Part shown: piece by piece, positions 53,960 through 64,000 of the stretch | Layout of the letters: each line of letters opens with the position of its first letter | Position numbering within the stretch: position 1 is the stretch's first letter | IMG/VR virus record: IMGVR_UViG_3300042302_000394 | Coordinates: 143,814-207,813 of that record | Reading direction: 5' to 3' (one strand) | Length of the DNA stretch: 64,000 nucleotides | Notes under the pieces: generated by a model | Database searches by the model: none | Told to the model about the DNA's origin: nothing | The model's input: only the letters and a program-made list of their open reading frames with translations | Made by a program: the position numbers and the translations under genes

Positions 53960-54270
53960 ATACAGTAGAGAAAACCGTAACTGTATAGGTAGTGTATGAG
54001 CTTAACCACAGTCGCTTACCGGATGGGAGTGGGGACCAAGTACATGAGCAGAAGTCCTAGACCTGTGTACTATACAGTGAAAGACCGGCCGGAATGTGGT
54101 AAGCGGCAAAGTCTAGCTCATTGAGCAGGAACAAGGTCTGCGGGCCCGTATAATGACACTTGCGTATATACGGGATATATAATGACTATACTGGTATATT
54201 GGAGTATTATCTCACTATATACAGTATAGTCTATTATGTAGATAATCAATAACTGATTATCTGGATTATC
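53960..54270 (+). ncRNA. Candidate structured non-coding RNA A
   Basis: Promoter upstream, no ORF, nested stems ATGAGCT/AGCTCAT and GTCGCTTACC/GGTAAGCGGC, plus further hairpins. Confidence 0.5.
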
Positions 54271-54272
54271 TT

Positions 54273-54524
54273 TTAAACAAACTCAATATTATCTGTACGC
54301 ATAGTTTGTTTTGCAGTAGAGATAATACGCTCTTTATCTTTTTGTATAGTTTCCCAAACAAAATCTCCGCTAACAAAATCGCATTTAGCACGAGTGGGAA
54401 ACTTCCAAGCACCTTTATCTGTTTGTTCTGTAACATTAAAAGCGCAGATAATAGTATATACTTCTTTTTCTTTATTATATACAATTTTAGCTTTTGCAGT
54501 GTTTGCAGTGTATACTTTTGACAT
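54273..54524 (-). CDS. Hypothetical early protein in inverted orientation, AT-rich
   Basis: AAGGA RBS; TATAAT at 54551-54556 on the minus strand. Confidence 0.75.
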   Translation of the reverse strand: MSKVYTANTAKAKIVYNKEKEVYTIICAFNVTEQTDKGAWKFPTRAKCDFVSGDFVWETIQKDKERIISTAKQTMRTDNIEFV

Positions 54525-54651
54525 GTGCTTCCTTTGTTGTTTAAGTATGTATTATAGCATCTTTTGGAGTGCCTGTCTTGTTGTATTTTGAACACAGATC
54601 ATTTGGAGGGTCTTTGGTTGACTGATTGGTAAAACCTTGCTATAATACACT

Positions 54652-54990
54652 ATGACGACACAAACAGTAACCCGTAAGAAGCGTGTAGACCGCAATCATA
54701 TCATCTATGAGCTTGTGGTCAACGGCAAGAACTACATTGGCGTCACAGCTAAGACAGAGAGCACTGTGAACAAGAGTGTTTTGAGTCGTGCCGCTAAACA
54801 CTTCTATCGTGCCAAGACTGAGACTAAGAACTGGCTGCTCTGTGCTGAGTTGCGCACACTGAGCGACAAGAGCGAGATTGAAGTATACGTGCATGAAGTT
54901 ATACGAGGCAAGGCAGAAGCCCACAAGCGTGAAGTAGAGATCCGCAGAATGGTTAAGCCTGTTTTAAATACAGACGTTCGTGGGGACTAA
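54652..54990 (+). CDS. GIY-YIG nuclease-superfamily protein
   Basis: HIIY...NYIGVT...R...H...E...KPVLN; ATG only 5 nt after TATAAT. Confidence 0.7.
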   Translation: MTTQTVTRKKRVDRNHIIYELVVNGKNYIGVTAKTESTVNKSVLSRAAKHFYRAKTETKNWLLCAELRTLSDKSEIEVYVHEVIRGKAEAHKREVEIRRMVKPVLNTDVRGD

Positions 54991-55061
54991 GTGTCACTTC
55001 AAGTAACACTTGACAAGTTGGTAAAACCGTGTTATAATTGACACTTACACACTAAGGAGCA

Positions 55062-55340
55062 ATGATGAGTTATACACTATACATCTACAAAGCAGATCGT
55101 CGTACAAAGACCGGAGAGCGCTTGTTCTCTACTACAGTTTGGCCCGTAGCGGATGACAATGCCATGCGCCGCACTGTAGCGGACTTGTTCCATTTGTACA
55201 GGCCAGAAGACGGCTTCCGCTTCGACTGGACTCCCAGCATGAAGACTGTTAAGAACTTGATGACTGGGGCAATGGTTGAGATCGCACACGACACTCCCCG
55301 CAGTTGCGATCCGTCAAGCGAACTCTACTGGAGCATGTGA
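55062..55340 (+). CDS. Hypothetical early protein
   Basis: AAGGAG RBS; C-terminal TP.SCDPSSELYWSM. Confidence 0.8.
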   Translation: MMSYTLYIYKADRRTKTGERLFSTTVWPVADDNAMRRTVADLFHLYRPEDGFRFDWTPSMKTVKNLMTGAMVEIAHDTPRSCDPSSELYWSM

Positions 55341-55501
55341 TGAAGAACGAAATTGAACGTTTGAACTTTGTGATCTGGGCCAAGGATCGATTCCCGGGCT
55401 TTACCACCAATCACGAACAATGGACCAAGGCCAATCGGGCATGGCGGGCTGTGGCTCGCAAAAACCCAATGGTTGACAAGGTTATCGGTTTTACCGTATA
55501 A
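55340..55501 (+). CDS. Small hypothetical early protein
   Basis: TGATG coupling, GGAG RBS; its last codons run through the next promoter. Confidence 0.55.
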   Translation: MKNEIERLNFVIWAKDRFPGFTTNHEQWTKANRAWRAVARKNPMVDKVIGFTV

Positions 55502-55528
55502 TATACACTTACACACAAAGGAGCTGAT

Positions 55529-55801
55529 ATGTCCGTTCAATCTATCAACAATGAGATTCTTGCAGGCAACTTCACTAACGATCAACTGACCAGCATCATC
55601 GACGCTGTGAAATTTGCCCGAGCACGCCTTGCAGAGAAGACCAAACGCTCTGTCACGCTGGGCAGTGCTGTGAAGTTCACTAGCACTAAAACAGGCATCA
55701 CTATGCAGGGTGTCGTAGACAAGATCGCGATCAAATACGTAACAGTTCGTACTAACCAGGGCCTGTGGAGGGTGCCTGCAAATATGTTAGAAACCGCTTG
55801 A
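55529..55801 (+). CDS. Hypothetical early protein (SH3-like C-terminus)
   Basis: AAGGAG RBS; G..VKF...G.V.KI..K...V....WRVPA.ML. Confidence 0.8.
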   Translation: MSVQSINNEILAGNFTNDQLTSIIDAVKFARARLAEKTKRSVTLGSAVKFTSTKTGITMQGVVDKIAIKYVTVRTNQGLWRVPANMLETA

Positions 55802-55852
55802 CACTTTGGTAAAACCGTGTTATAATACATACTTGTTTAACAGGAGAAGACG

Positions 55853-56209
55853 ATGACTGTAGTGTATAAAGCAGGTGAGCAGACCTTTAAGGCCGTTGAG
55901 TTGTTGTTTGGCAAGCGCGAACTGGTCAATGCCGTTGTAGAGCAAGTACTGATCAGCCAGACAGAAGCTTTCATTGAGATGATCATGGACGGGCAAGAGG
56001 ACATGTCGCGCAATGGGATCAACGAAACCCTGCGTGGCGTTAAAGACAGCGCCACTGACTTCATTGGCGATATGATGGGCGACCTCGAAAGCATGATCAG
56101 AGAGCGTCTCAAGCAGGTCAACTACGGCGCGGCTGTGACGGGTATTAAGTACGATCTCGCTGGCGACGTTACAGATATTGAGGTCGATGTGTCTGTGGGC
56201 GTTGAATAA
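55853..56209 (+). CDS. Acidic hypothetical early protein
   Basis: AGGAG RBS, 118 aa. Confidence 0.8.
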   Translation: MTVVYKAGEQTFKAVELLFGKRELVNAVVEQVLISQTEAFIEMIMDGQEDMSRNGINETLRGVKDSATDFIGDMMGDLESMIRERLKQVNYGAAVTGIKYDLAGDVTDIEVDVSVGVE

Positions 56210-56271
56210 CCCTTCGGTTGACAGGGTTGGTAAAACCTGTTATAATACATACATCGCAACAAGGAGCTGAT

Positions 56272-56502
56272 ATGCGCAAGTACACTACGAAGCTGTTAGA
56301 GATGATGGATGAGGGTTTGATCTCAGCAGAAGCTGTGGCAGAGATGGCATTGGCCTACATGAGCGAGGACGATGTTAAAGACATGTGCCGTGCTAACGAC
56401 ATCCTGGACGAAGAGGATGAGGACACCATTGTTGAAGAAGACGAGGAGTGGACTCCCGACAATGCAGACTTCTGCGATCCCGGCTCACGTCACCACTATT
56501 GA
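56272..56502 (+). CDS. Acidic hypothetical early protein
   Basis: AAGGAG RBS before ATG 56272. Confidence 0.8.
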   Translation: MRKYTTKLLEMMDEGLISAEAVAEMALAYMSEDDVKDMCRANDILDEEDEDTIVEEDEEWTPDNADFCDPGSRHHY

Positions 56503-56511
56503 AAGGCAACT

Positions 56512-56892
56512 ATGCGATACTACGATGAACTGGCAACTTACGAGCGCGATGGCTTTACTGTGATCGTAGACAAGAGCTACGAAGACCTGAACCCACGTGA
56601 TTGCTTTGACTTTGATAGTGAAGAAGAAGTTAGCAAGATGTGTAAAGACATCGACAATGGCAACTTGGATTGGTTCATGTTGCGAGTGCGTGTAATGGTT
56701 GACAGCCTTGAGATGGGTTCGCACTACCTGGGCGGATGTCTGTACAAGGATGCTCGCGAAGTACTGACAGACGGCACCGCAGAGGACTGCATCGGCGAAG
56801 CACTGCACGAAGCCAAACGCGAAGTCTACAAGTACAAACAAAAATTCGCTGAGTTGAGCGACATGGTTGATCGTGAAGGTGTTGATGTTTAA
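56512..56892 (+). CDS. Hypothetical early protein
   Basis: 126 aa, YLGGCLY motif. Confidence 0.8.
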   Translation: MRYYDELATYERDGFTVIVDKSYEDLNPRDCFDFDSEEEVSKMCKDIDNGNLDWFMLRVRVMVDSLEMGSHYLGGCLYKDAREVLTDGTAEDCIGEALHEAKREVYKYKQKFAELSDMVDREGVDV

Positions 56893-57115
56893 TAAGAATG
56901 AAGTACTACAGTGGGTGGGTGCCGTGGCGATCATTGCCGGGCACGTACTCAACGCAATAGGTCCCAGTGTCTATCCTTACAATATTATCGCGTTCGCTGT
57001 GGGCACTGTAGCGTTCTTGGCATGGGCTATCCGTGTGGCAAATAAGCCACAGGCTGTGGTCAACGTTGTATCATTAGCCATAGGCATTGTAGGGTTATAC
57101 AAAGCATTTGGTTGA
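56885..57115 (+). CDS. Small three-TM membrane protein
   Basis: Hydrophobic 76 aa; stop is the TGA of the next TTGACA. Confidence 0.75.
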   Translation: MFNKNEVLQWVGAVAIIAGHVLNAIGPSVYPYNIIAFAVGTVAFLAWAIRVANKPQAVVNVVSLAIGIVGLYKAFG

Positions 57116-57146
57116 CAAGTTGGTAAAACCTTGCTATAATAAGGCA

Positions 57147-57348
57147 TAGTAAGAAATAAACAGGGTTACCTAGTCCGTTAGGGCCCACAGCAAGCGAAGA
57201 GTTCCGACGGGGACAGGTTGCTGTGGGGCATGAAGGCAGTTGTAAACGAAAGTTTACACGAGTTGCTGACGGGGAACTAGGGCGTAATGTTTGGCACACC
57301 GAACGTTAGAGACGGACTAACGGGTAGTTGACAATCCCCTGTTTTCTT
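57147..57348 (+). ncRNA. Candidate structured non-coding RNA B
   Basis: Perfect TTGACA-17-TATAAT upstream, no RBS or ORF, multi-stem junction (see findings). Confidence 0.75.
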
Positions 57349-57382
57349 GCTATAATACACACTTACACACTAAGGAGCAAAG

Positions 57383-57652
57383 ATGAAAGCACTAGAGAAG
57401 TTTATCGAGCAGAAGAATCACTGGAACAGTTTCTTCAAAGGCGAGCAATACGAGATCCAGAGTGCCAAGGGTCGCCAGCGTATCGCAGACATGATCGATG
57501 CCGCATTGAGTCCGGAGAACTTGACCTGTGATGGCGAACTGAGCCGCACAGAAGTCAATCGTCGCTACAAGGAACTGATGACTGCGGCAAAGCAGTTGAA
57601 GAAGTTGGACCCGGCTGTTTCTTTTTACGAGTGGGAAGAGGAGATCATCTAA
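57383..57652 (+). CDS. Hypothetical early protein
   Basis: AAGGAG RBS; LSPENLTCDGE motif. Confidence 0.85.
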   Translation: MKALEKFIEQKNHWNSFFKGEQYEIQSAKGRQRIADMIDAALSPENLTCDGELSRTEVNRRYKELMTAAKQLKKLDPAVSFYEWEEEII

Positions 57653-57864
57653 TGAAAGCAATGGTTACAACTGTTCTCCGTCAGGAGATTGAAGTGCCCG
57701 AGGGCACGGATCGTCAAAGTGTGCTGGAGTTTCTGGCAGAGAACCAAAGCTTCACAGATGCGTTCTGTGGTGTTAGCGATATGACACAACGGTTCCGCAT
57801 TGTTGATATCAGTGTGGTGGAAGAAGAGATTACTGAACTTGGCGAGGAGAGCTACGATGCCTAA
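57652..57864 (+). CDS. Hypothetical early protein
   Basis: TAATG coupling, GAGGAG RBS. Confidence 0.7.
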   Translation: MKAMVTTVLRQEIEVPEGTDRQSVLEFLAENQSFTDAFCGVSDMTQRFRIVDISVVEEEITELGEESYDA

Positions 57865-58405
57865 TTGGTGTTCAAACGGTATTACACTGCGTCACGCAGA
57901 CCCCCAAATGATCCAGCGGGCCGCCAAGGCTCTGCAAGAGGGCAAGTTCCTGCAGGAGTTCATTCCTTGCCCTGCCGAACTGCTGGACACTGTGGCTCAG
58001 ATGGGCACCAACGATGCTGAAAAAGCTAACCGAGAGAAGTACGGATACAGTTCCTGGTATGACTTCAATGTGGCCAACTGGGGCACCAAGTGGGATGTAG
58101 AGTCTAGCAATGTAGAGATCGAGGATGCTAACACTGTCACAGCTGGCTTCGACAGTGCCTGGGCACCACCCATCCGTGCATATGAGCAGTTGATGGACTT
58201 GGGCTTTGATCTAGTGGCCTTCTACTACGAGCCTGGCATGCAGTTTGTGGGCAAGTGGGACAACGGTAGTGACGACTGCTGTGAGTACGGTGGCGCAACT
58301 GCTGACACGGTGCGTGACATGATCGGCGAGGAGTTAGACGACTACTTCTGCATCAGCGAGAGTATGGCTGACTGGGAAGAAGAGAACCAAGAGGATCAAG
58401 AATAA
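57857..58405 (+). CDS. DUF1281/YubB-like ferredoxin-fold protein
   Basis: MPNWCSN...WY.....NWGTKWD...FDSAWAPP...YYEPGM.F.G. Confidence 0.8.
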   Translation: MPNWCSNGITLRHADPQMIQRAAKALQEGKFLQEFIPCPAELLDTVAQMGTNDAEKANREKYGYSSWYDFNVANWGTKWDVESSNVEIEDANTVTAGFDSAWAPPIRAYEQLMDLGFDLVAFYYEPGMQFVGKWDNGSDDCCEYGGATADTVRDMIGEELDDYFCISESMADWEEENQEDQE

Positions 58406-58488
58406 CCCTACAGCCCCCAGGGGCTTTGGTTGCTCGTTTTACAAAACAGTGTTATAATACACACATGTTAAAACAAACAGGAACCAAA

Positions 58489-58665
58489 ATGTTAAAAATG
58501 TATACACTGCAACGCAATAACACTTATCTAATTGCAGGAAAATTTGTGCCGCTAGCAGTAGCACAAAAAAATAAAGCAAGCATGTACAAATATAAAACTA
58601 TGCTCGCACATGCAACACAAAGCATTAAGCAAGCAGGAGACACTGTAGCAGTGTTTACTTTATAA
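58489..58665 (+). CDS. Small basic hypothetical protein, AT-rich
   Basis: AGGA RBS after promoter 58430. Confidence 0.6.
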   Translation: MLKMYTLQRNNTYLIAGKFVPLAVAQKNKASMYKYKTMLAHATQSIKQAGDTVAVFTL

Positions 58666-58748
58666 CCCTACAGCACATAGGGTCTTTGGTTGCCCTGTGT
58701 ACCTTTTTGCGTTATAATACACACATGTTAAACGAAAAGGAAATTAAA

Positions 58749-59135
58749 ATGCAAACATACACTACACTGCACACAAACGGACTCGGCTACTGGAGCCGCA
58801 CAGCTAAAGCTGTAGACGTTACGAAACTAGACTTGCAGTTCATTAACGACGAGAGAGACTTCGGCGAGCTGTGTGTGTACTTTACAGCAGACAGCTGGGA
58901 CGTTAACACAATGGGACTAATTTACACAGACAAGCAGTTTAAAGCAGAACTGCGTGAGTACTTGGTTACGTTGGGCTTTACGCAAGCAGAAGCAAACGAC
59001 GTGGAGTACAGCGAGCAGGGTATGCAGGGCGACAATTACGTGTCGTGCGATGTAGGAGATAAGTTTATTGCGGGCTTAATGCGTTTGGACCCCCAGCATG
59101 TTAACGCTGTGATTGCGGAGTGCGAGGGCATTTAA
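58749..59135 (+). CDS. Hypothetical early protein
   Basis: AAGGA RBS; G.GYWS...GLIYTD...YSEQGMQG..YVS.D. Confidence 0.8.
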   Translation: MQTYTTLHTNGLGYWSRTAKAVDVTKLDLQFINDERDFGELCVYFTADSWDVNTMGLIYTDKQFKAELREYLVTLGFTQAEANDVEYSEQGMQGDNYVSCDVGDKFIAGLMRLDPQHVNAVIAECEGI

Positions 59136-59217
59136 TAGTACAGTAAAGTGGAAGGGCATTGTTGACAGCAGTGCCCTTTTGCGTTATAATACACACATAC
59201 ACTAAACAGGAGCAGAC

Positions 59218-59373
59218 ATGAAGCGTACAGATGTTGAAGAGCTGTTGGGAAAGATGGAACAGTTTGCGGACTTCCTGTTTGCACAGGGCAAGAACTGTGC
59301 AGGCAATGAGCTGTTGGGCTTTATTGAGACCGCAGATGCTGTGTTAGAGGACTGCGAGTTGGAGGCGGAATGA
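59218..59373 (+). CDS. Small acidic protein, 51 aa (absent from the ORF track)
   Basis: AGGAG RBS; MKRTDVEELLGKMEQFADFLFAQGKNCAGNELLGFIETADAVLEDCELEAE; ATGA overlap with the next gene. Confidence 0.75.
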   Translation: MKRTDVEELLGKMEQFADFLFAQGKNCAGNELLGFIETADAVLEDCELEAE

Positions 59374-59594
59374 TTACAGCGGACAAACTCAAACTCCTCA
59401 CCAACATGCCAGCAGTTATGCTAGAGCAGGCACTGCCCGTCAAAGGCCGACCCAAACTCAAGACAGCCCGCTTCCTGGGCATCACCAACGGGCACGAGTT
59501 CTGCTACCTTGTGACAGACACTGATGACGGTGCGGGCAAACTGTTCCTCAAGTATGACCCTACAGCGGATAAGGTTTCTGCTACGCTGGCTTGA
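59370..59594 (+). CDS. Hypothetical early protein
   Basis: GGAGG RBS; stop lies inside the next TTGACA. Confidence 0.75.
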   Translation: MITADKLKLLTNMPAVMLEQALPVKGRPKLKTARFLGITNGHEFCYLVTDTDDGAGKLFLKYDPTADKVSATLA

Positions 59595-59644
59595 CAAGTT
59601 GGCAAAATCTTGTTATAATACATACATCGCAACAAGGAGTAGAC

Positions 59645-59908
59645 ATGCTTACAGTCAATCAAACTACCCGCTCTTACACTGGCAAGCCCGGCTGCATGTG
59701 CGGATGCAATGGCACTTACAACGAGGGCGAACGTGCTCGTAAGATGGCTATAACTGCTCTGCTTAAAAACCCTGCTGTGCGCTACGACAGCTGGAACGAT
59801 GGGCAAGAGGGCGCTGTGTTTGTTGTTACAGCTACCCGCAATCGTGTACTTTATCTTACAGCAGAGGGCGTGAAAGCTGTTGAAGCTATGGGCGTAAAGC
59901 CCGAGTAA
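59645..59908 (+). CDS. Hypothetical early protein with GCMCGC motif
   Basis: AAGGAG RBS; YTGKPGCMCGCNGTY. Confidence 0.8.
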   Translation: MLTVNQTTRSYTGKPGCMCGCNGTYNEGERARKMAITALLKNPAVRYDSWNDGQEGAVFVVTATRNRVLYLTAEGVKAVEAMGVKPE

Positions 59909-59980
59909 GCTGTAGGGTCTTTGGTTGACAGGGTAGCCAAACAGTGTTATAATACACACATACACAACAAAGGAGCTGAT

Positions 59981-60223
59981 ATGAATATGTCTTACTGCAT
60001 GTTTGAGAACACAATGAATGATCTGCGTCACTGCGTGGAAGCAATGGACAATGCGGACTCTATGAGCGAGCTGGACTTGAGCCGCACTGAGAAAGCAGCT
60101 TATGAGTATATGCGCGAGCTGTGCCAAAACTTCCTGGACTGTGCAGAGCGCCTGGAGCAAGAGGAAGCTGACGGACAGCCCGACGAAGCGCAAGAGTGGG
60201 CAGACTTTGATCCCGATTGCTGA
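59981..60223 (+). CDS. Acidic hypothetical early protein
   Basis: AAGGAG RBS; NMSYCMFENT..DL..C motif. Confidence 0.8.
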   Translation: MNMSYCMFENTMNDLRHCVEAMDNADSMSELDLSRTEKAAYEYMRELCQNFLDCAERLEQEEADGQPDEAQEWADFDPDC

Positions 60224-60336
60224 AATGTCAACCCCTGCCATTAGACCCTGCAACACGCCTGGGTACTTCGCAGGGGTTGACAGTTTGGTAAAACCTTGCT
60301 ATAATTAACACTTACACAAACACACTGGAGCACACA

Positions 60337-60750
60337 ATGGGTACACGAAGCACTATCGCACTTGAGTTTGCAGATGGCACAGTACAGCAAGTCTACTGTC
60401 ACTGGGACGGCTACCTGGCACACAACGGCCAGCTCTTGCTCAAGCACTACAGCGATCCGTTCAAACTGCGTGACTTGATTGACTTGGGCGGTTTCTCAAG
60501 CCTGTGCGACTCTGTTGAGGAAACTAAACAGGGTGCCTACACACAACGCGGTGAAGAGTTGTCGATTGAGAAATACAAAGACATTGAGGACTATTACAAA
60601 AATGTCAGCGGCGAGGAGTACGACTACATCCTCAGCATGAACTGGAAAGGCAAGGCTCAGTGGTATGTTCGTCACTACGGCACACAAGAGAATTGGATTC
60701 CGTTAGAACTGGCATTTGAACAAGAGAAGCAAGAGGAGGAAATGGAATGA
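60337..60750 (+). CDS. Hypothetical early protein (YCHWDGY family)
   Basis: MGTRS.I...VYCHWDGY...G..L..HY...EEYDY. Confidence 0.85.
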   Translation: MGTRSTIALEFADGTVQQVYCHWDGYLAHNGQLLLKHYSDPFKLRDLIDLGGFSSLCDSVEETKQGAYTQRGEELSIEKYKDIEDYYKNVSGEEYDYILSMNWKGKAQWYVRHYGTQENWIPLELAFEQEKQEEEME

Positions 60751-60926
60751 GCAAGATCGCTGAACTGGCATACGACATTGAGCAACTGTACATCGATGGC
60801 ATGAGTGCCAGAATGATTGCACTGACATTGGATTGCCCCGTGGAGATGGTCTACGGTTGGATTGAAGGCAACAGTGTTGCTGATACGCCACAAGAGGAGG
60901 AAGTCTATTCGCCATATTTTGGTTGA
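60747..60926 (+). CDS. Small helix-turn-helix protein, 59 aa (absent from the ORF track)
   Basis: GAGGAGG RBS, ATGA overlap; LYIDGMSARMIALTLDCPVEMVYGWI fits an HTH pattern. Confidence 0.7.
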   Translation: MSKIAELAYDIEQLYIDGMSARMIALTLDCPVEMVYGWIEGNSVADTPQEEEVYSPYFG

Positions 60927-61008
60927 CAGTTCCTCCAAAAGAGGTTATAATTAATACATGGACAGCGCGGTGCTGTTCGTACACACAGACAAACACAAAG
61001 GAAATTTT

Positions 61009-61428
61009 ATGTCTAAATCTTTTACCCATGCTGGCGTTTCTAAACAAGATGGCCAATTCAAAGTTCGTTTTGCCAATGACGCACTGCGTACCAAGGTGCT
61101 GATCAAGAACGGTCATACCGATATTGATATCATCGAGCTGAAACACGCTATGACCAAAGAGGACGCTGTTGCTTATCTCATGGAGATCGACTTTGCCACT
61201 ACCAACGGCAAGACCAATGCTGATGTGTTGGCTGCACTGGCTGCTGAGATCGACAAGCGTAGCGAAGTGCCTGCTAAAGAGGCTAAGGTTGCCAAAGCTG
61301 CAAAGGCCAAGCCTACTATGAAGGCTATCGAAGCCAAGGTGGCTGCTAAGAAGGCAGAAGCCAAACCCACTCCTACTAAAGCCCAAGTGATTGCCCAGCT
61401 GGCTGACATGGAAGACGCCCCTTACTAA
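61009..61428 (+). CDS. Hypothetical protein with Lys/Ala-rich tail
   Basis: AAGGA RBS; KVRFAND...KVL.KNGHTDI; AKEAKVAKAAKAKP tail. Confidence 0.8.
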   Translation: MSKSFTHAGVSKQDGQFKVRFANDALRTKVLIKNGHTDIDIIELKHAMTKEDAVAYLMEIDFATTNGKTNADVLAALAAEIDKRSEVPAKEAKVAKAAKAKPTMKAIEAKVAAKKAEAKPTPTKAQVIAQLADMEDAPY

Positions 61429-61512
61429 GAATAACCCCTGCAGTGTGCGTAGAGGCAATGTCAATAAGTCCTCTTCGATAACATGTATAACGGGGTATTC
61501 AGAGAGAACACT

Positions 61513-61731
61513 ATGAGTAGATTAGATTATATTGGTCGTCCTTGGACGGCATTCGATCCGGAGAACAAGCAACACCGCAAATGGTTTGCAGAGTTCCAAA
61601 GGTCCGGTACTTGGGGTCGTTGCCCTGTTCGATTCATTGTTTCGGATCAGCACGGGGATTTGATTACCCTTATCCAGCGTAAACTGATCGGACATTATGT
61701 CGATCGTGAATTTGGCAAAATTAGTGCTTGA
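61513..61731 (+). CDS. Hypothetical early protein
   Basis: RP...FDP.NK.HR.W...F.....WG.CPVRF. Confidence 0.75.
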   Translation: MSRLDYIGRPWTAFDPENKQHRKWFAEFQRSGTWGRCPVRFIVSDQHGDLITLIQRKLIGHYVDREFGKISA

Positions 61732-61796
61732 TTTACCAGTCAGTCTTCTCTATAATAGATAATAACTGCACAGCAGTATCTAACAAGGAAGACAAA

Positions 61797-62066
61797 ATGA
61801 AAACGATTAATCCAGAAACCAAAGCCGGGAAACTATTCACAGCATTGAAAGCAGGCGAGGCATTGACTCCTGCACAGGCTGCAAAGCGTTTCGGTATCAA
61901 GAATGTCACAGCTGAAGTCAGCCGTATTCGTCAAAGCGGTTTCGCAGTGTATGCAAACAACCGCAAAGCCGGTAACGGTGTTGAAGTGACCGAGTATGTT
62001 ATGGGTCAACCAAGCCGCAAGATCATTGCCGCAGGTTACAAGGCTATGGCTCTCGGCCTTGCGTAA
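61797..62066 (+). CDS. Winged helix-turn-helix DNA-binding protein
   Basis: L..GE.LT..QA..RFGI.N..A.VS.IR..GF.VY.N; AAGGA RBS. Confidence 0.75.
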   Translation: MKTINPETKAGKLFTALKAGEALTPAQAAKRFGIKNVTAEVSRIRQSGFAVYANNRKAGNGVEVTEYVMGQPSRKIIAAGYKAMALGLA

Positions 62067-62116
62067 GTAGAGAGTTCGCTCCGAAGTCCTGGGGGTAGTG
62101 TCCCAGGCAAACCCCC

Positions 62117-62158
62117 GAGCCCTGCCACGCTGTGAAGCTGTTGCGGGGCTCACCTTTT
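62117..62158 (+). terminator. Probable terminator hairpin
   Basis: GAGCCCTGC...GCGGGGCTC followed by ACCTTTT. Confidence 0.5.
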
Positions 62159-62220
62159 GTGGCAAAAATACAACACCAAAAGAGGTTGACAGAGTGGTAA
62201 AACCTTGCTATAATACATAC

Positions 62221-62493
62221 ATGAACTTAAACAATGTCGACGAAGAATGGTTCCGCAGAGATCGAAGCTTTCGTATCATAGGCAATGATCAAGTAGGCTA
62301 TCATGTCCGAGCCTGTGGAAACCATCGTGTTCTCAGCGATAGAGAAGAGCCCTTAAAGACCCTACAAGACGCAAGGAATTGGTTGACAGAATACTATCCC
62401 GGTGTTATAATACATACATCGCAACAAGGAGCAGTCAATGAGCTACATTGTTTTCAAACACAACAAGGAATACGGTCCACGCAAAGGACTTGA
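62221..62493 (+). CDS. Possible leaderless ORF that reads through the next promoter cassette
   Basis: ATG 6 nt after TATAAT; the C-terminal third overlaps promoter 62383 and the next gene. Confidence 0.35.
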   Translation: MNLNNVDEEWFRRDRSFRIIGNDQVGYHVRACGNHRVLSDREEPLKTLQDARNWLTEYYPGVIIHTSQQGAVNELHCFQTQQGIRSTQRT

Positions 62494-62641
62494 AGGACCC
62501 TTCCACTATCCCAATGGCCGTGTTGCCTACTACGATCCTAAGGAAGGCCGCTACTGGGATCCACGGACTGACTTCTACCTCGAGACTGAGGAAGCCGCTG
62601 AACTCCAGAACTCGATCTTCGGAGTGCTGAAACGTGCTTAA
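62438..62641 (+). CDS. Hypothetical early protein
   Basis: AAGGAG RBS; GLEGPF...G.V.YYDPKEG.Y.D...D.Y. Confidence 0.8.
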   Translation: MSYIVFKHNKEYGPRKGLEGPFHYPNGRVAYYDPKEGRYWDPRTDFYLETEEAAELQNSIFGVLKRA

Positions 62642-62819
62642 GATACATCCAGACCTTAACCCACTAGAGGTCATCCTAGTCGAAGAGGACATGGCCCGCA
62701 AGGGAATCACACACTACACAATGACTCCGGGCAATGACTGCATCTGGGTCTACTACGGTTCTATGAACCTTTACTACATCTTCAACGAGGGTAAGATACA
62801 TGACATCCAAATCGATTAA
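62634..62819 (+). CDS. Hypothetical early protein
   Basis: GTG start with GGAG RBS, overlaps both neighbours. Confidence 0.6.
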   Translation: MLKIHPDLNPLEVILVEEDMARKGITHYTMTPGNDCIWVYYGSMNLYYIFNEGKIHDIQID

Positions 62820-63009
62820 AGTCTATCAGGAAACCACACAGTGGACAGACAGCAACGCCGGTAACCATGTCTACATCTTCAACGAGCGGGTTACAGGTCG
62901 AAGTGCCACAGCTATTGCCTACATACCTGCGGGCACAGATCAGGTAAAGAAGTTCCGTACACCGCTCAAGCTGGATCTCAAAGGGCGAACATTTAAAGAG
63001 TTGACTTGA
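62800..63009 (+). CDS. Hypothetical early protein
   Basis: 69 aa; ETT.W...NH.Y...R.F pattern. Confidence 0.7.
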   Translation: MTSKSIKVYQETTQWTDSNAGNHVYIFNERVTGRSATAIAYIPAGTDQVKKFRTPLKLDLKGRTFKELT

Positions 63010-63035
63010 TAAATAATTGACTGTATAATAGAACT

Positions 63036-63323
63036 ATGAAACGAATCCTTACTTCAATCGCACTGATCGCATCCTTGGGCACTGCACAGGCAGCTGGTCC
63101 AGAGGATGTCTTGCTGGGTATCATCCTAGGCGGATTCATAGGCAATTCAATGGCTAAACAACAGCCCGTTCAGCCTCCTGTAATCGTTCAACAACCTCCT
63201 GTGATCTACCAACCACAACCGCAGATCATCTACCAACCCTTGCCCCCACAGCCGGTATGCTACCATACTCCGGTCTATAACGGCTATGGTCAGTTCTTTG
63301 GCTGGCGCACTCACTGTAGATAA
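63036..63323 (+). CDS. Exported or membrane Pro/Gln-rich protein
   Basis: Signal peptide, glycine-zipper-like LLGIILGGFIG, QPPVIYQP repeats; ATG 6 nt after TATAAT. Confidence 0.75.
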   Translation: MKRILTSIALIASLGTAQAAGPEDVLLGIILGGFIGNSMAKQQPVQPPVIVQQPPVIYQPQPQIIYQPLPPQPVCYHTPVYNGYGQFFGWRTHCR

Positions 63324-63329
63324 AGATTC

Positions 63330-63404
63330 CTGGCCATAGTTCAATGGACAGAACATCTGCCTTCTAAGCAGTCAATCCAGGTTCGATTCCTGGTGGCCGG
63401 ACCA
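63330..63404 (+). tRNA. tRNA-Arg (anticodon TCT)
   Basis: Acceptor CTGGCCA/TGGCCGG, D arm GTTC/GAAC, anticodon loop CTTCTAA, T loop TTCGATT, encoded CCA. Confidence 0.95.
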
Positions 63405-63472
63405 AATAACCCTGCACTTGACAGGGTTTCTTTTTGATGTTATAATACATACATCGCAACAAGGAGCACACA

Positions 63473-63790
63473 ATGGCTAAACTGTTAATCACTACACAAT
63501 ACTACGAGAACTACGGTGCCCATGATTGGGACGGCAAGAACGAGTGCCCACAGTACTGGAAAGCCAAGGGCGGTTCGGACTACGTGGTCAAGAAGTTCAA
63601 AGGTGGCTCTGCCGATGCTACCATGGCGGTCATGTGCCTGCGAGCACAGATTGAGTCAGACAACGATCACTTCCGTGAAACAGTGATCGACTTCCGCATT
63701 GTCAAGGACGACTACCTCACAGAGTTTGAGCAGAGCCAGTTGGACTACGAAGGTTCCATCCGTTACCCAGCAAAAGAGTTGGTTTGGTAA
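63473..63790 (+). CDS. Hypothetical early protein
   Basis: AAGGAG RBS; TQY.ENYGAHDWDG..ECPQYWK.KGG. Confidence 0.85.
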   Translation: MAKLLITTQYYENYGAHDWDGKNECPQYWKAKGGSDYVVKKFKGGSADATMAVMCLRAQIESDNDHFRETVIDFRIVKDDYLTEFEQSQLDYEGSIRYPAKELVW

Positions 63791-63857
63791 AGACCTTAGT
63801 GGTTGACAGGGCTTTGAATTCCTGTTACAATACACACATAGACACTAAGGAGCAAAG

Positions 63858-64000
63858 ATGATTAGAGAACACATCGAGATGGACACACGACACGGTGGTC
63901 CTTATGATCGCGGCATGGCAGACAGCTATTACCGCAGGGACTACAATCCCCACTACTACCTAGGTGACACCAAAGCCTCAGGGCGTGTCACTCTCAAGGA
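63858..64000 (+). CDS. Hypothetical early protein, truncated by the window edge
   Basis: AAGGAG RBS; RHGGPYDRG.ADSYY.R...PHYY. Confidence 0.75.
   Translation, partial: MIREHIEMDTRHGGPYDRGMADSYYRRDYNPHYYLGDTKASGRVTLK

What the first reader, a model, noticed from the sequence alone, without database searches (positions are those of the whole stretch)
54600..64000. One-promoter-per-gene cassette array with stem-loops and stop codons embedded in the -35 box
Seen: 20 near-perfect sigma70 promoters in 9.3 kb, with recurring leaders (ATACATACATCGCAACAAGGAG x4; ACACTTACACAC.AAGGAGC x3) and upstream ACCCT...AGGG inverted repeats, including a perfect 13-bp TGTCAACCCCTGC/GCAGGGGTTGACA at 60226-60282. 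The upstream gene's stop is the TGA within the TTGA of the next -35 box at 55801, 57115, 59594, 60926 and 61731. Known: PeSL (promoter early stem-loop) elements of T4-type phages mediate modular shuffling of small ORFs. Inference: a recombinase-free, integron-like array of host-takeover and anti-defence genes exchanged by recombination between promoter repeats, which may also act as an RNA polymerase sink. AT-rich cassettes (54273-54524 inverted; 58430-59135) look recently acquired.
Basis: partly seen in the sequence, partly recalled or inferred. Interest (0 to 1): 0.7.

Follow-up and report, generated by a model that had tools for sequence, protein, structure and literature searches.

The report
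Early-promoter gene cassette array, jumbo phage
The region is the early-gene block of an uncultivated lake jumbo phage. Small genes of unknown function, and one new structured RNA, each sit behind a near-identical bacterial-type promoter and leader, and these repeated signals have sometimes served as crossover points for swapping genes between related phages.

Summary
Window 54.6-64 kb holds 14 perfect and about 6 near-perfect sigma70 consensus promoters, all on the + strand. They serve 29 small ORFs, one tRNA and one ORF-less structured RNA. The quoted leaders, the 13-bp inverted repeat and the five stops inside -35 boxes are all present.

The window is the last 64 kb of a 208-kb fragment of a roughly 350-kb lake-water jumbo myovirus. 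Sibling contigs carry the array about 4 kb further.

At least 37 related IMG/VR lineages have the same unidirectional array. The gene backbone is conserved, with many single-gene insertions, deletions, replacements, transpositions and one cassette inversion.

Four indels show chimeric promoters or leaders, with the crossover in the -35/spacer, in the -10/leader, or (one case) at the leader/SD. One exact 20-nt leader precedes unrelated genes in different lineages.

Promoter-less junctions break often too. Only a subset of elements has a significant hairpin. The ORF functions are unknown.

Verdict: this is a PeSL-like early or host-takeover hyperplastic region in a non-T4 jumbo phage family, so a new variant of a known kind. 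The claims of anti-defence content, an RNA polymerase sink and a recombinase-free mechanism are untested.

By-products: a new covariation-supported ncRNA, and a conserved leaderless gene with a GIY-YIG fold at the head of the array.

The parts
54273..54524 (-). AT-rich 83-aa ORF (GC 0.31) with its own array-type promoter and leader on the minus strand at 54579-54525. It is a cassette inverted relative to other lineages.
   Evidence: inverted repeats I1-I6. tblastn shows 61% aa identity to family x14, which in relatives points the same way as the array. GC.
54618..54990 (+). P54618 (11/12) plus g1 (54652-54990, 112 aa). The ATG lies 5 nt after the -10 box and there is no SD, so this is a candidate leaderless mRNA. 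The protein has a GIY-YIG fold.
   Evidence: The ATG lies 5-6 nt after the -10 box in all 25 lineages. Alignment A3 has 82% mean column identity with IIY...YIG and invariant R46, E94 and N106. The model has pLDDT 85.8. The I-TevI catalytic domain is the top hit, prob 0.96-0.97. PHROG GIY-YIG match E=7.7e-4.
55010..55501 (+). P55010 (12/12) plus g2 (55065-55340) and g3 (55340-55501). The stop of g3 lies in the -10 box of the next promoter.
55473..55801 (+). P55473 (12/12, 18-nt spacer, spacer motif inverted as GGTTTTACC) plus g4 (55529-55801). The stop of g4 is the TGA in the next -35 box.
55798..56209 (+). P55798 (12/12) plus g5 (55853-56209).
   Evidence: The cassette is absent in several lineages.
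56218..57115 (+). P56218 (12/12, type-A leader) plus g6 (56272-56502, acidic, paralogue of g17), g7 (56512-56892) and g8 (56885-57115, small membrane protein whose stop lies in the next -35 box).
57112..57356 (+). P57112 (12/12) driving an ORF-less structured RNA of about 210 nt (about 57146-57356). Its 3' part contains the next promoter, P57328.
   Evidence: MFE -83.1 against -57.2 +/- 4.5 in shuffles, z -5.8. No Rfam match. Alignment A2 has 11 compensatory pairs against 3.7 +/- 1.5. Model R1 finds 20 copies, only one of them in this genome. In A4, 58 of 72 pairs covary.
57328..58405 (+). P57328 (12/12, type-B leader) plus g9 (57383-57652), g10 (57652-57864) and g11 (57857-58405, Api92/YubB-like lead).
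   Evidence: g10 is precisely absent in the L040 lineage.
58405..58665 (+). GC hairpin plus T-run, weak promoter P58430 (TTGCTC/TATAAT) and AT-rich g12 (58489-58665, GC 0.35).
   Evidence: (D6, D8). The family occurs only in this lineage and the L040 lineage.
58665..59135 (+). Terminator-like hairpin 58665-58700, P58690 (10/12) and g13 (58749-59135).
   Evidence: terminator list; z -2.2. The family is in 19 lineages.
59154..59594 (+). Terminator hairpin 59154-59176 whose loop is the -35 hexamer of P59162 and whose T-run lies in the promoter spacer, followed by g14 (59218-59373) and g15 (59370-59594, stop in the next -35 box).
   Evidence: Sequence. RNAfold dG -28, z -3.8..
59591..59908 (+). 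P59591 (12/12, type-A leader) plus g16 (59645-59908).
59925..60223 (+). P59925 (12/12) plus g17 (59981-60223, paralogue of g6).
60226..60926 (+). Perfect 13-bp inverted repeat 60226-60282, whose 3' arm ends in the -35 box of P60277 (12/12), followed by g18 (60337-60750) and g19 (60747-60926, stop in the next -35 box).
   Evidence: (dG -36.2, z -6.3). A second copy of the 114-nt element lies beyond the window end, seen in sibling contig L035 (80.7% identity).
60923..61731 (+). P60923 (12/12), a 58-nt leader, g20 (61009-61428, with an Ala/Lys-rich tail) and g21 (61513-61731, no promoter of its own, stop in the next -35 box).
   Evidence: g21 belongs to family x8.
61728..62162 (+). P61728 (TTGATT, 10/12), g22 (61797-62066, winged HTH), then two hairpins, the second terminator-like (62117-62162).
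   Evidence: Pfam HTH_39 E=3.6e-7, above the curated cut-off. Sequence.
62186..62493 (+). P62186 (12/12) plus g23 (62221-62493). This is an uncertain leaderless ORF that overlaps the next promoter and gene. It has GC3 0.37 and is found in this lineage only.
62383..63009 (+). P62383 (12/12, type-A leader) plus g24 (62438-62641), g25 (62634-62819) and g26 (62800-63009).
63001..63404 (+). P63001 (11/12), g27 (63036-63323, ATG 6 nt after the -10 box, N-terminal signal-like segment) and tRNA-Arg(TCT) at 63330-63404.
63408..63790 (+). Intrinsic-terminator-like hairpin 63408-63428 that encloses the -35 box of P63418 (12/12, type-A leader), followed by g28 (63473-63790).
   Evidence: (both lists).
63803..64000 (+). 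P63803 (11/12) and the start of g29 (63858 onward). The array runs off the contig end.
   Evidence: It continues with promoters at positions equivalent to 64369, 64533, 65003, 65365, 65994, 66511 and 68238 in identical sibling contigs.

Best explanation
This is the early (probably host-takeover) hyperplastic gene block of an uncultivated freshwater jumbo myovirus of about 350 kb.

Each small ORF or two- to three-gene mini-operon, and one structured non-coding RNA, sits behind a standardised expression cassette. The cassette has these parts:
- an optional hairpin or terminator, often interleaved with the promoter (the -35 box in the hairpin loop or 3' arm, the T-run in the spacer);
- GG followed by a consensus TTGACA;
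- a 17-nt spacer that often carries GGTAAAACC and an extended -10 TG;
- TATAAT;
- a leader of about 20 nt, ACAyACAyAC..., with an AAGGAG Shine-Dalgarno.

Inferred function: host sigma70 holoenzyme fires all units as soon as the DNA enters the cell.

The cassettes also place 20-60 bp of near-identical sequence at gene boundaries. General homologous recombination within and between co-infecting relatives therefore sometimes crosses over inside them, adding, deleting or replacing promoter-plus-gene modules without breaking expression. This is the mechanism proposed for PeSLs in T4-type phages.

Shown here: the repeat structure, its conservation across lineages, the gene flux, and a few promoter-internal crossovers.

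Inferred only: promoter activity, early timing, the functions of the ORFs, and how much of the flux the promoters cause.
For: Promoter density and perfection. Repeat families.

Family-wide consensus over 402 non-redundant elements: GG at -2/-1 in 78-79%, TG before the -10 box in 67-76%, and a conserved initial transcribed region. The distance from the -10 box to the ATG peaks sharply at 26-27 nt, with a second class at 5-6 nt.

Genome setting:
- The window is the end of a 207,813-bp virus record that is 58% complete.
- Tail-fibre, baseplate and ligase genes lie upstream.
- A 99%-complete 353-kb relative has 53 perfect promoters against 1 in the control. About 30 of them lie in one dense cluster at 324-347 kb.

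Conservation and flux:
- More than 118 IMG/VR stretches carry the promoter/spacer motif.
- They resolve to 37 lineages.
- The backbone is conserved, with many indels and transpositions.

Promoter involvement:
- 100 of 277 indels are flanked by promoters on both sides.
- Chimeric promoters have the switch inside the shared core.
- An identical 20-nt leader precedes unrelated genes.
- Promoter-bearing junctions are less conserved in the pooled set (0.31 versus 0.50, p=1e-4).

Other support:
- Mosaic tracts of 98-100% identity sit among 46-85% flanks in the comparison with L040.
- The phage is present in at least 22 lake-water runs, and assembly contigs break exactly at the promoter repeats.
- Known analogues are PeSLs (PMC2839356, PMC4122927) and the SPO1 host-takeover module (PMC6873191).
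Against: - There are no transcription data for this phage, and the host is unknown.
- The only RNA runs hold relatives at low depth.
- With this window as the reference, promoter-bearing and promoter-less junctions do not differ significantly (86/140 versus 80/116, p=0.29).
- Thirty-four indels have no promoter on either side.
- Edges of the high-identity tracts also fall inside genes.
- Only 4 clean chimeras were found. Most events are too old to read (5 of 61 testable cases fit at >=0.85).
- The orthologous promoter is still the best match in 108 of 241 comparisons, and the promoter subclass (GGTAAAACC or not) is largely specific to the gene family. Much promoter identity is therefore inherited and constrained, not homogenised.
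- Hairpins are significant at only 4 of 20 sites.
- Terminator-like sites are not enriched overall: 14 against 8.2 +/- 3.4.
Confidence: 0.72

Rival explanations
1. The repeats are expression signals only. Near-identical promoters and leaders are kept by strong selection for maximal early expression. Gene flux comes from ordinary illegitimate or gene-internal homologous recombination. Breakpoints appear at gene boundaries only because other products are lost to selection.
For: - Promoter-less junctions break almost as often, and 34 indels are free of promoters.
- Precise operon-internal deletions and insertions occur, such as g10 and x34.
- The promoter subclass is stable within gene families.
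- The orthologous promoter is the best match in 45% of comparisons, far above chance.
Against: - Chimeric promoters switch parent inside an 18-nt or 13-nt stretch shared by all three sequences.
- An exact 20-nt leader is attached to unrelated genes while the coding DNA differs by 15-35%.
- Both-side promoter flanking is over-represented among indels at promoter junctions: 100 of 189.
Confidence: 0.22
2. The array works mainly as a regulatory or titration device. The conserved spacer motif GGTAAAACC (also found inverted) and the dyad-symmetric spacers would be operators for a phage protein, for example the wHTH protein g22, that switches early transcription off. Alternatively, the many perfect promoters would sequester host RNA polymerase.
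For: - GGTAAAACC occurs in 140 of 422 elements, and inverted in 15.
- Dyads with arms of at least 6 bp occur in 46 of 422 spacers against 5 of 422 shuffled spacers.
- A wHTH gene lies in the array.
- There are 27 or more strong sites per genome copy.
Against: - No binding or expression data exist.
- Two-thirds of the promoters lack the motif.
- The dyads can equally be embedded terminator hairpins.
- This reading does not explain the gene flux, and it is compatible with the main explanation.
Confidence: 0.1
3. The pattern is an assembly or metagenome-binning artefact: chimeric contigs joined at shared 31-mers.
For: Logan contigs break and tangle at the promoter repeats, and the listed joints are mostly from relatives or graph effects.
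Against: - The same sequence was recovered at 100% identity in five independent IMG/VR loci from other samples: L035+L114, L064, L104 and L045.
- Contigs of 0.7-1.6 kb with zero mismatches, found in several runs, tile the laid 54.6-60.5 kb part of the array, overlapping or abutting at the promoter repeats.
Confidence: 0.02

Closest known systems
PeSL (promoter-early stem-loop) cassettes of T4-type phages such as RB49, phi1, T4/PST and KVP40/nt-1 (Arbiol et al. 2010, PMC2839356; Comeau et al. 2014, PMC4122927)
   Same: - Repeated composite elements lie between the stop of one small ORFan and the ATG of the next.
- They combine a strong sigma70-like promoter, an SD and sometimes a stem-loop with G-run/C-run arms.
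- They are concentrated in a hyperplastic region.
- Indels and replacements between relatives cross over inside the element, between the -35 box and the SD.
   Different: - The host phage is an uncultivated jumbo myovirus of about 350 kb. Its only detectable cultured relatives are distant: ligase 32-34% and a ClpA-like ATPase 42% to PA5oct-type phages.
- No AT-rich upstream (UP-like) element is present. GG precedes the -35 box instead.
- The hairpin, where present, is interleaved with the promoter (the -35 box in the loop or arm, the T-run in the spacer) or lies inside the spacer, and most elements lack a significant one.
- In 7 cases the upstream ORF overlaps the next promoter; five of them end in the -35 box.
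- Mini-circles were not tested.
Host-takeover module of Bacillus phage SPO1 (26 small early genes in a 12.4-kb terminal region; PMC6873191, citing Stewart et al. 1998)
   Same: - A block of about 13-14 kb holds roughly 30-40 small genes in many short operons.
- Each operon has promoter and ribosome-binding signals typical of very highly expressed genes.
- The block is unidirectional, and here it lies at or near contig ends.
   Different: - No sequence homology was detected.
- Early timing, toxicity to the host and location in a terminal redundancy are not shown here.
- Depth data are ambiguous. Depth doubles in two runs from about 55.3 kb, but this is explained by a co-occurring strain.
Integron gene-cassette arrays
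   Same: Both are unidirectional arrays of small, exchangeable, mostly unknown-function genes separated by repeated boundary elements.
   Different: - There is no integrase, no attI or attC, and no single common promoter.
- Here every unit carries its own promoter, and exchange appears to use general homologous recombination.
- The resemblance is an analogy only.
GIY-YIG nuclease domain (I-TevI catalytic domain, UvrC N-terminal domain), for g1 only
   Same: - The IIY...YIG motifs are present, with invariant Arg, Glu and Asn.
- The predicted beta-beta-alpha-alpha-beta-alpha fold has the I-TevI catalytic domain as its best match.
   Different: - The protein is only 112 aa, with no DNA-binding domain.
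- The Foldseek E-value is only 0.07-0.1 and the PHROG match is E=7.7e-4.
- Activity and target are unknown.

Membership tests
PeSL cassettes (T4-type phages) | Strong sigma70-like early promoter close to consensus, in the intergenic space of small ORFs | tested here: met
   14 perfect and 6 near-perfect promoters on the coding strand. Activity itself was not assayed.
PeSL cassettes (T4-type phages) | Stable stem-loop (terminator or attenuator) adjacent to the promoter | tested here: inconclusive
   Hairpins are significant at 58690, 59162, 59925 and 60277, and the tool lists terminators at 58665/58675 and 63408. The other sites are at chance, and 7 promoters are overlapped by the upstream ORF.
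PeSL cassettes (T4-type phages) | [quoted passage not shown] | tested here: not met
   Positions -12 to -3 show only a weak preference (top base 0.32-0.50), and -2/-1 are GG in 78-79% of 402 elements.
PeSL cassettes (T4-type phages) | Concentrated in hyperplastic regions rich in ORFans | tested here: met
   Nearly all ORFs lack a Pfam or PHROG function, and gene content varies among 37 lineages.
PeSL cassettes (T4-type phages) | Indels and replacements between relatives with the crossover inside the element | tested here: met
   Four chimeric junctions: three switch within the -35/spacer or the -10/leader start and one at the leader/SD. 100 of 277 indels are flanked by promoters. Many other indels do not involve promoters.
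PeSL cassettes (T4-type phages) | Formation of mini-circles by recombination between flanking elements | not testable with these tools
   Only Logan contigs were available for the runs. The joints seen are from relatives or are graph effects.
PeSL cassettes (T4-type phages) | The genome is a T4-type (Straboviridae) phage | tested here: inconclusive
   T4-like tail, baseplate and fibre PHROG hits are present. The Gp23 Pfam search was uninformative because its control did not ring. The nearest cultured hits are SPO1-like and PA5oct-like at 32-42%.
Integron | Tyrosine-recombinase integrase with attI, attC sites bounding the cassettes, and a common promoter Pc | tested here: not met
   No integrase-like ORF lies in or next to the array. 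The boundary elements are promoters, one per unit.
SPO1-type host-takeover module | Cluster of small early genes with strong promoters and RBSs in the terminal region; products shut off host processes | tested here: inconclusive
   The architecture matches. Timing, terminal redundancy and toxicity could not be tested, and depth data are ambiguous.
GIY-YIG nuclease superfamily (g1) | GIY and YIG motifs about 10 residues apart, a conserved Arg, a catalytic Glu, an Asn, and the alpha/beta fold | tested here: met
   IIY17-19 and YIG28-30; R46, E94 and N106 invariant in 25 sequences. Model pLDDT 85.8. The I-TevI and UvrC GIY-YIG domains are among the top hits. E-values are weak, and residue equivalence is inferred.
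Any Rfam 15 family (RNA at 57146-57356) | Match to a curated covariance model | tested here: not met
   No hit for type 1 at E<=10 except a chance CRISPR-DR match. No hit for the type-2 loci at E<=0.1.

The most novel reading that the evidence does not exclude
The array is an active cassette-exchange system, not a passive one. In this reading, the invariant leaderless GIY-YIG protein at its head nicks or cuts at or near the standardised promoter cassettes and so stimulates gene conversion and cassette capture between co-infecting relatives. That would be a promoter-based, integrase-free functional analogue of an integron. The conserved structured RNA, expressed from its own consensus promoter, would be a further dedicated component of takeover or exchange.
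Probability: 0.07. Interest if true: 0.85.

Novelty: new variant of a known kind. Interest (0 to 1): 0.55.

Why it matters
The result extends promoter-mediated modular shuffling, so far documented only in T4-type phages, to a large and abundant family of freshwater jumbo phages. It comes with a ready-made comparative data set of 37 lineages and 277 indels.

It shows a compact design in which terminator, promoter, stop codon and leader overlap.

It also provides three concrete targets: about 40 unknown early genes per genome as candidates for host-takeover or counter-defence functions, a conserved leaderless GIY-YIG gene, and a new covariation-supported ncRNA family.

The standardised perfect promoters and leaders may be useful as synthetic-biology parts.

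Tried and rejected
- Megablast and blastn against 50,697 phage records found no cultured relative and no similar cassette. The only hit, Phage C48C1, shares one ORF fragment.
- The Pfam Gp23 search of the phage's own genome was uninformative because the control was silent.
- Read-laying for mini-circles or deletion joints was limited to assembler contigs. All the joints found are at promoters, but each rests on a short 22-52-nt side and most are seen in a single contig at a 90% likeness threshold, so I took them to come from relatives or collapsed k-mers and did not count them as evidence.
- I tested whether the array lies in a terminal repeat by looking at depth. Depth doubles in two runs from about 55.3 kb but not in two others, and a co-occurring strain with an insertion at the g2/g3 junction explains the doubling.
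- RNA runs hold only relatives at low depth and give no support for or against expression of the ncRNA.
- Pfam and PHROG searches covered nearly all the ORFs, and three Atlas searches were added. They gave only a wHTH (g22), a sub-threshold DUF6552 match (g8), Api92/YubB-like leads (g11) and a 'T4-like GC 66' hypothetical (g18).
- PADLOC was not run, because it models defence systems, not counter-defence.
- Systematic chimera scoring mostly failed because the events are old: only 5 of 61 fit at >=0.85.

Full report
WHAT THE WINDOW IS. The window is bases 143814-207813, the last 64 kb, of a 207,813-bp IMG/VR virus record rated 58% complete. Upstream ORFs hit tail-fibre, baseplate-wedge and ATP-dependent DNA ligase PHROGs, plus a ClpA-like ATPase. 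The nearest cultured phages are distant: the ligase is 32-34% identical to SPO1-like and PA5oct-like phages, and the ATPase is 42% identical to PA5oct. No close relative exists among 50,697 phage records. The same sequence occurs in at least 22 lake-water and freshwater metagenome runs. A related record of 353,233 bp is rated 99% complete. The source is therefore an uncultivated freshwater jumbo myovirus of about 350 kb.

CHECK OF THE OBSERVATION. The consensus scan of 54000-64000 finds 35 sigma70-like sites against 12.3 +/- 3.5 in shuffles. Fourteen are perfect 12/12 matches and three score 11/12, all on the + strand. Adding the 10/12 sites at 58690 and 61728 and a weaker one at 58430 gives 20 promoters. 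The repeat finder groups them into families of 15 x 47 nt, 9 x 56 nt and 8 x 58 nt. The two quoted leaders occur 4 and 3 times, and the 13-bp inverted repeat lies at 60226-60238 and 60270-60282. Each is expected zero times in shuffles. Five ORFs end on the TGA inside the next TTGACA, at 55801, 57115, 59594, 60926 and 61731. One more ORF ends in a -10 box, and another ends just behind a -35 box.

Three corrections apply. First, there are 20 promoters for 29 ORFs, one tRNA-Arg(TCT) and one ORF-less RNA, so 8 units are two- or three-gene mini-operons. Second, upstream hairpins are significantly stable only at 58690, 59162, 59925 and 60277, and terminator-like sites are not enriched overall (14 against 8.2 +/- 3.4). 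Third, of the 'AT-rich cassettes' only g12 (GC 0.35) and the minus-strand gene 54273-54524 (GC 0.31) are AT-rich, while g13 has GC 0.49.

ANATOMY OF A CASSETTE. I aligned 402 non-redundant elements from this and related phages. Their consensus is GG (78-79%), then TTGACA, then a 17-nt spacer that often reads nnnT-GGTAAAACC-n with TG (67-76%) before TATAAT, then a conserved initial transcribed region ACAyACATACACA and an AAGGAG Shine-Dalgarno. The distance from the -10 box to the ATG peaks at 26-27 nt.

Where hairpins exist, they are interleaved with the promoter.
- At 59154-59176 an 8-bp stem has the -35 hexamer as its loop and its T-run in the promoter spacer.
- At 63408-63428 the tool's own terminator call encloses the -35 box of P63418.
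- At 60226-60282 the 3' arm of a 13-bp stem ends in TTGACA.
- In relatives, dyads with arms of at least 6 bp lie inside the spacer in 46 of 422 elements, against 5 of 422 after shuffling.

The motif GGTAAAACC is present in 140 of 422 elements and inverted in 15, including P55473. It is largely specific to certain gene families: g1 has it in 21 of 25 lineages, while g20, g13 and g22 never do. This points to a constrained promoter subclass, not to homogenisation.

EXTENT. Perfect promoters occur throughout the genome, on the minus strand outside the array at roughly one per 3-6 kb. The array is the one dense cluster, and it lies on the + strand. It begins at a divergent promoter pair at about 54550-54650. 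It runs off the contig end, and identical sibling contigs (L035, L024) continue it for about 4.3 kb, with promoters at positions equivalent to 64369-68238. In the 99%-complete relative, about 30 of the 53 perfect promoters lie at 324-347 kb, and the reversed-pattern control gives 1 match.

COMPARATIVE TEST OF THE SHUFFLING IDEA. blastn and stitching gave contigs from 37 lineages at 97% identity or above, all with unidirectional promoter-dense arrays. After simple gene calling and clustering, the arrays share a backbone order. They differ by many single-gene insertions, deletions, replacements and transpositions, so gene order is not fixed.

I counted 277 distinct A-B versus A-X-B events.
- 100 have a promoter at the junction in the short form and on both sides of the insert in the long form.
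- 84 more have a promoter in the short form and on only one side of the insert; 54 have none in the short form but at least one in the long form; 5 have one only in the short form.
- 34 have no promoter at all.

Four events can be read at the nucleotide level. In three the short-form promoter is a chimera of the two long-form promoters. In one the switch lies inside a shared TTGACAGAATGGTAAAAC, and a second event switches at the same promoter. In a third it lies inside the shared TATAATACATACA. A fourth switches at the leader/SD. A further, weaker case fits the chimera model at 0.87.

The exact 20-nt leader ACATACATCGCAACAAGGAG precedes at least eight unrelated gene families in different lineages, although coding DNA there differs by 15-35%. 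Against the closest distinct relative (L040), identity is a mosaic: tracts of 98-100% (56449-57601, 58389-58657, 60204-60431) lie among flanks of 46-85%. The minus-strand gene 54273-54524, with its own array-type promoter, is 61% identical in protein to a gene that in other lineages points the same way as the array. This is a cassette inversion.

LIMITS OF THAT SUPPORT. With this window as the reference, adjacency is kept in 86 of 140 comparisons across promoter-bearing junctions and in 80 of 116 across promoter-less ones (Mann-Whitney p=0.29). Over all junction types seen in any lineage the means are 0.31 (88 promoter-bearing) against 0.50 (43 promoter-less), p=1e-4, and these data are phylogenetically non-independent. 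Operon-internal genes are also gained and lost precisely: g10 is missing in L040, and a strain with an insertion at the g2/g3 junction co-occurs in the lake samples. Edges of the high-identity tracts fall inside genes as well as near promoters. The orthologous promoter is still the best match in 108 of 241 comparisons. Only 5 of 61 testable events fit a chimera model well, because most are old. Promoter cassettes are therefore one demonstrable crossover substrate. They are not the only route of gene flux.

READS. Both read-laying runs could use only Logan contigs. These break and tangle exactly at the promoter repeats (54626, 56238/56266, 57106/57112, 58643/58672, 59640). This shows that identical 31-mers are shared within and between co-occurring relatives. 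The listed joints rest on short 22-52-nt sides at 90% likeness and look like relatives' contigs or graph effects, so I cannot count them as mini-circles. Depth gives no clear sign of a terminal repeat.

GENE CONTENT. Pfam and PHROGs give almost nothing. g22 is a winged HTH (HTH_39, E=3.6e-7). g8 is a small membrane protein that falls below the cut-off for DUF6552. g11 resembles Api92/YubB ferredoxin-like proteins. g18 belongs to a phage-only family of hypothetical proteins. g6 and g17 are acidic paralogues. The host-takeover or anti-defence reading rests only on analogy with T4 hyperplastic regions and the SPO1 host-takeover module, which has 26 small early genes in a 12.4-kb terminal region with signals of highly expressed genes (PMC6873191).

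FIRST EXTRA FINDING: g1. In all 25 lineages examined, the g1 ATG lies 5-6 nt after the -10 box with no SD, which makes it a candidate leaderless mRNA. The protein is far more conserved than its neighbours (82% mean column identity). It carries IIY...YIG motifs and invariant R46, E94 and N106. The AlphaFold model (pLDDT 85.8) has the I-TevI GIY-YIG catalytic domain as its best match (prob 0.96-0.97, TM 0.5-0.6, but E 0.07-0.1), and UvrC, Slx1 and Hpy188I are also listed. A nuclease-fold gene at the head of the array makes the label 'recombinase-free' premature. A role for it in exchange is speculation.

SECOND EXTRA FINDING: AN ORF-LESS RNA. P57112 is followed by no ORF. Instead there is a highly structured segment at about 57146-57356 (MFE -83.1 against -57.2 +/- 4.5, z -5.8). 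It is absent from Rfam 15. It is conserved between the g8 and g9 families in many lineages, in a roughly 212-nt form and a 250-295-nt form. Six close sequences already show 11 compensatory pairs against 3.7 +/- 1.5 in shuffles and at most 2 in slid controls. A covariance model built from them finds 20 full-length copies, only one of them in this genome, and the hits include the long form. On that model-fitted alignment, 58 of 72 pairs show double changes and 93.5% of cells pair, against 69% in shuffles and at most 48% when slid. The next promoter is embedded in the RNA's 3' helices. Its function is unknown.

COMPARISON AND VERDICT. The closest known system is the PeSL of T4-type phages. The shared features are a composite promoter (with or without a stem-loop) plus SD repeated between ORFans in a hyperplastic region, and crossovers inside the element. 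The differences are these: the phage family differs; there is no AT-rich upstream element; the hairpin is optional and is interleaved with the promoter instead of preceding it; ORFs frequently terminate inside the next promoter; mini-circles were not tested. The block works like an SPO1-type host-takeover module and resembles an integron only by analogy, since it has no integrase, attC or common promoter. I rate it a new variant of a known kind.

Noticed in passing
window 57112-57356 (+): A perfect promoter drives an ORF-less, strongly structured RNA of about 210 nt. It is absent from Rfam 15 and conserved as a short form (~212 nt) and a long form (250-295 nt) in 20 related loci, with only one copy in this genome and extensive covariation. 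It looks like a new phage ncRNA family of unknown function.
   Followed up: yes
window 54641-54990 (+); also 63024-63323 and 62209-62493: The ATG of g1 lies 5-6 nt after the -10 box with no Shine-Dalgarno in all 25 lineages, so it is a candidate leaderless mRNA. The protein has a GIY-YIG fold and is the most conserved gene of the array. g27 and the doubtful g23 have the same spacing in this genome.
   Followed up: yes
window 59154-59180 and 63408-63435 (+): These are terminator-type hairpins whose loop or 3' arm is the -35 hexamer of the next promoter and whose T-run is that promoter's spacer. A terminator and a promoter are superimposed within about 30 nt.
   Followed up: partly
promoter spacers, e.g. 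window 55020-55028, 57122-57130, 60287-60295; inverted at 55487-55495: The spacer motif GGTAAAACC occurs in a third of 422 family-wide promoters, sometimes inverted, and is tied to particular gene families. It may be a protein-binding or DNA-bending element that defines a promoter subclass.
   Followed up: partly
window 54273-54579 (-): An AT-rich promoter-plus-gene cassette is inverted in this lineage relative to its homologue (family x14) in other lineages. This creates a divergent promoter pair at the start of the array.
   Followed up: yes
window 63315-63467 (+): The tRNA-Arg(TCT) and the adjoining promoter are 97% identical to the L026 and L081 lineages, while neighbouring DNA is 67-78% identical. 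The tRNA sits inside the early array as its own module.
   Followed up: no
window 55340 junction; runs X3, X6: Contig depth doubles from about 55.3 kb in two lake runs, and a contig diverges right after 55343. A co-occurring strain appears to carry an extra gene between g2 and g3, which is a promoter-less junction.
   Followed up: partly
window 54600-64000 versus the rest of the window: The array has GC 0.48 (GC3 often 0.55-0.66) against 0.42 for the whole window. The region 42-46 kb falls to GC 0.31-0.34.
   Followed up: no
window 61009-61428 (+): g20, conserved in 23 contigs, has an Ala/Lys/Pro-rich C-terminal tail reminiscent of histone H1-like DNA-binding tails. It has no family match.
   Followed up: no
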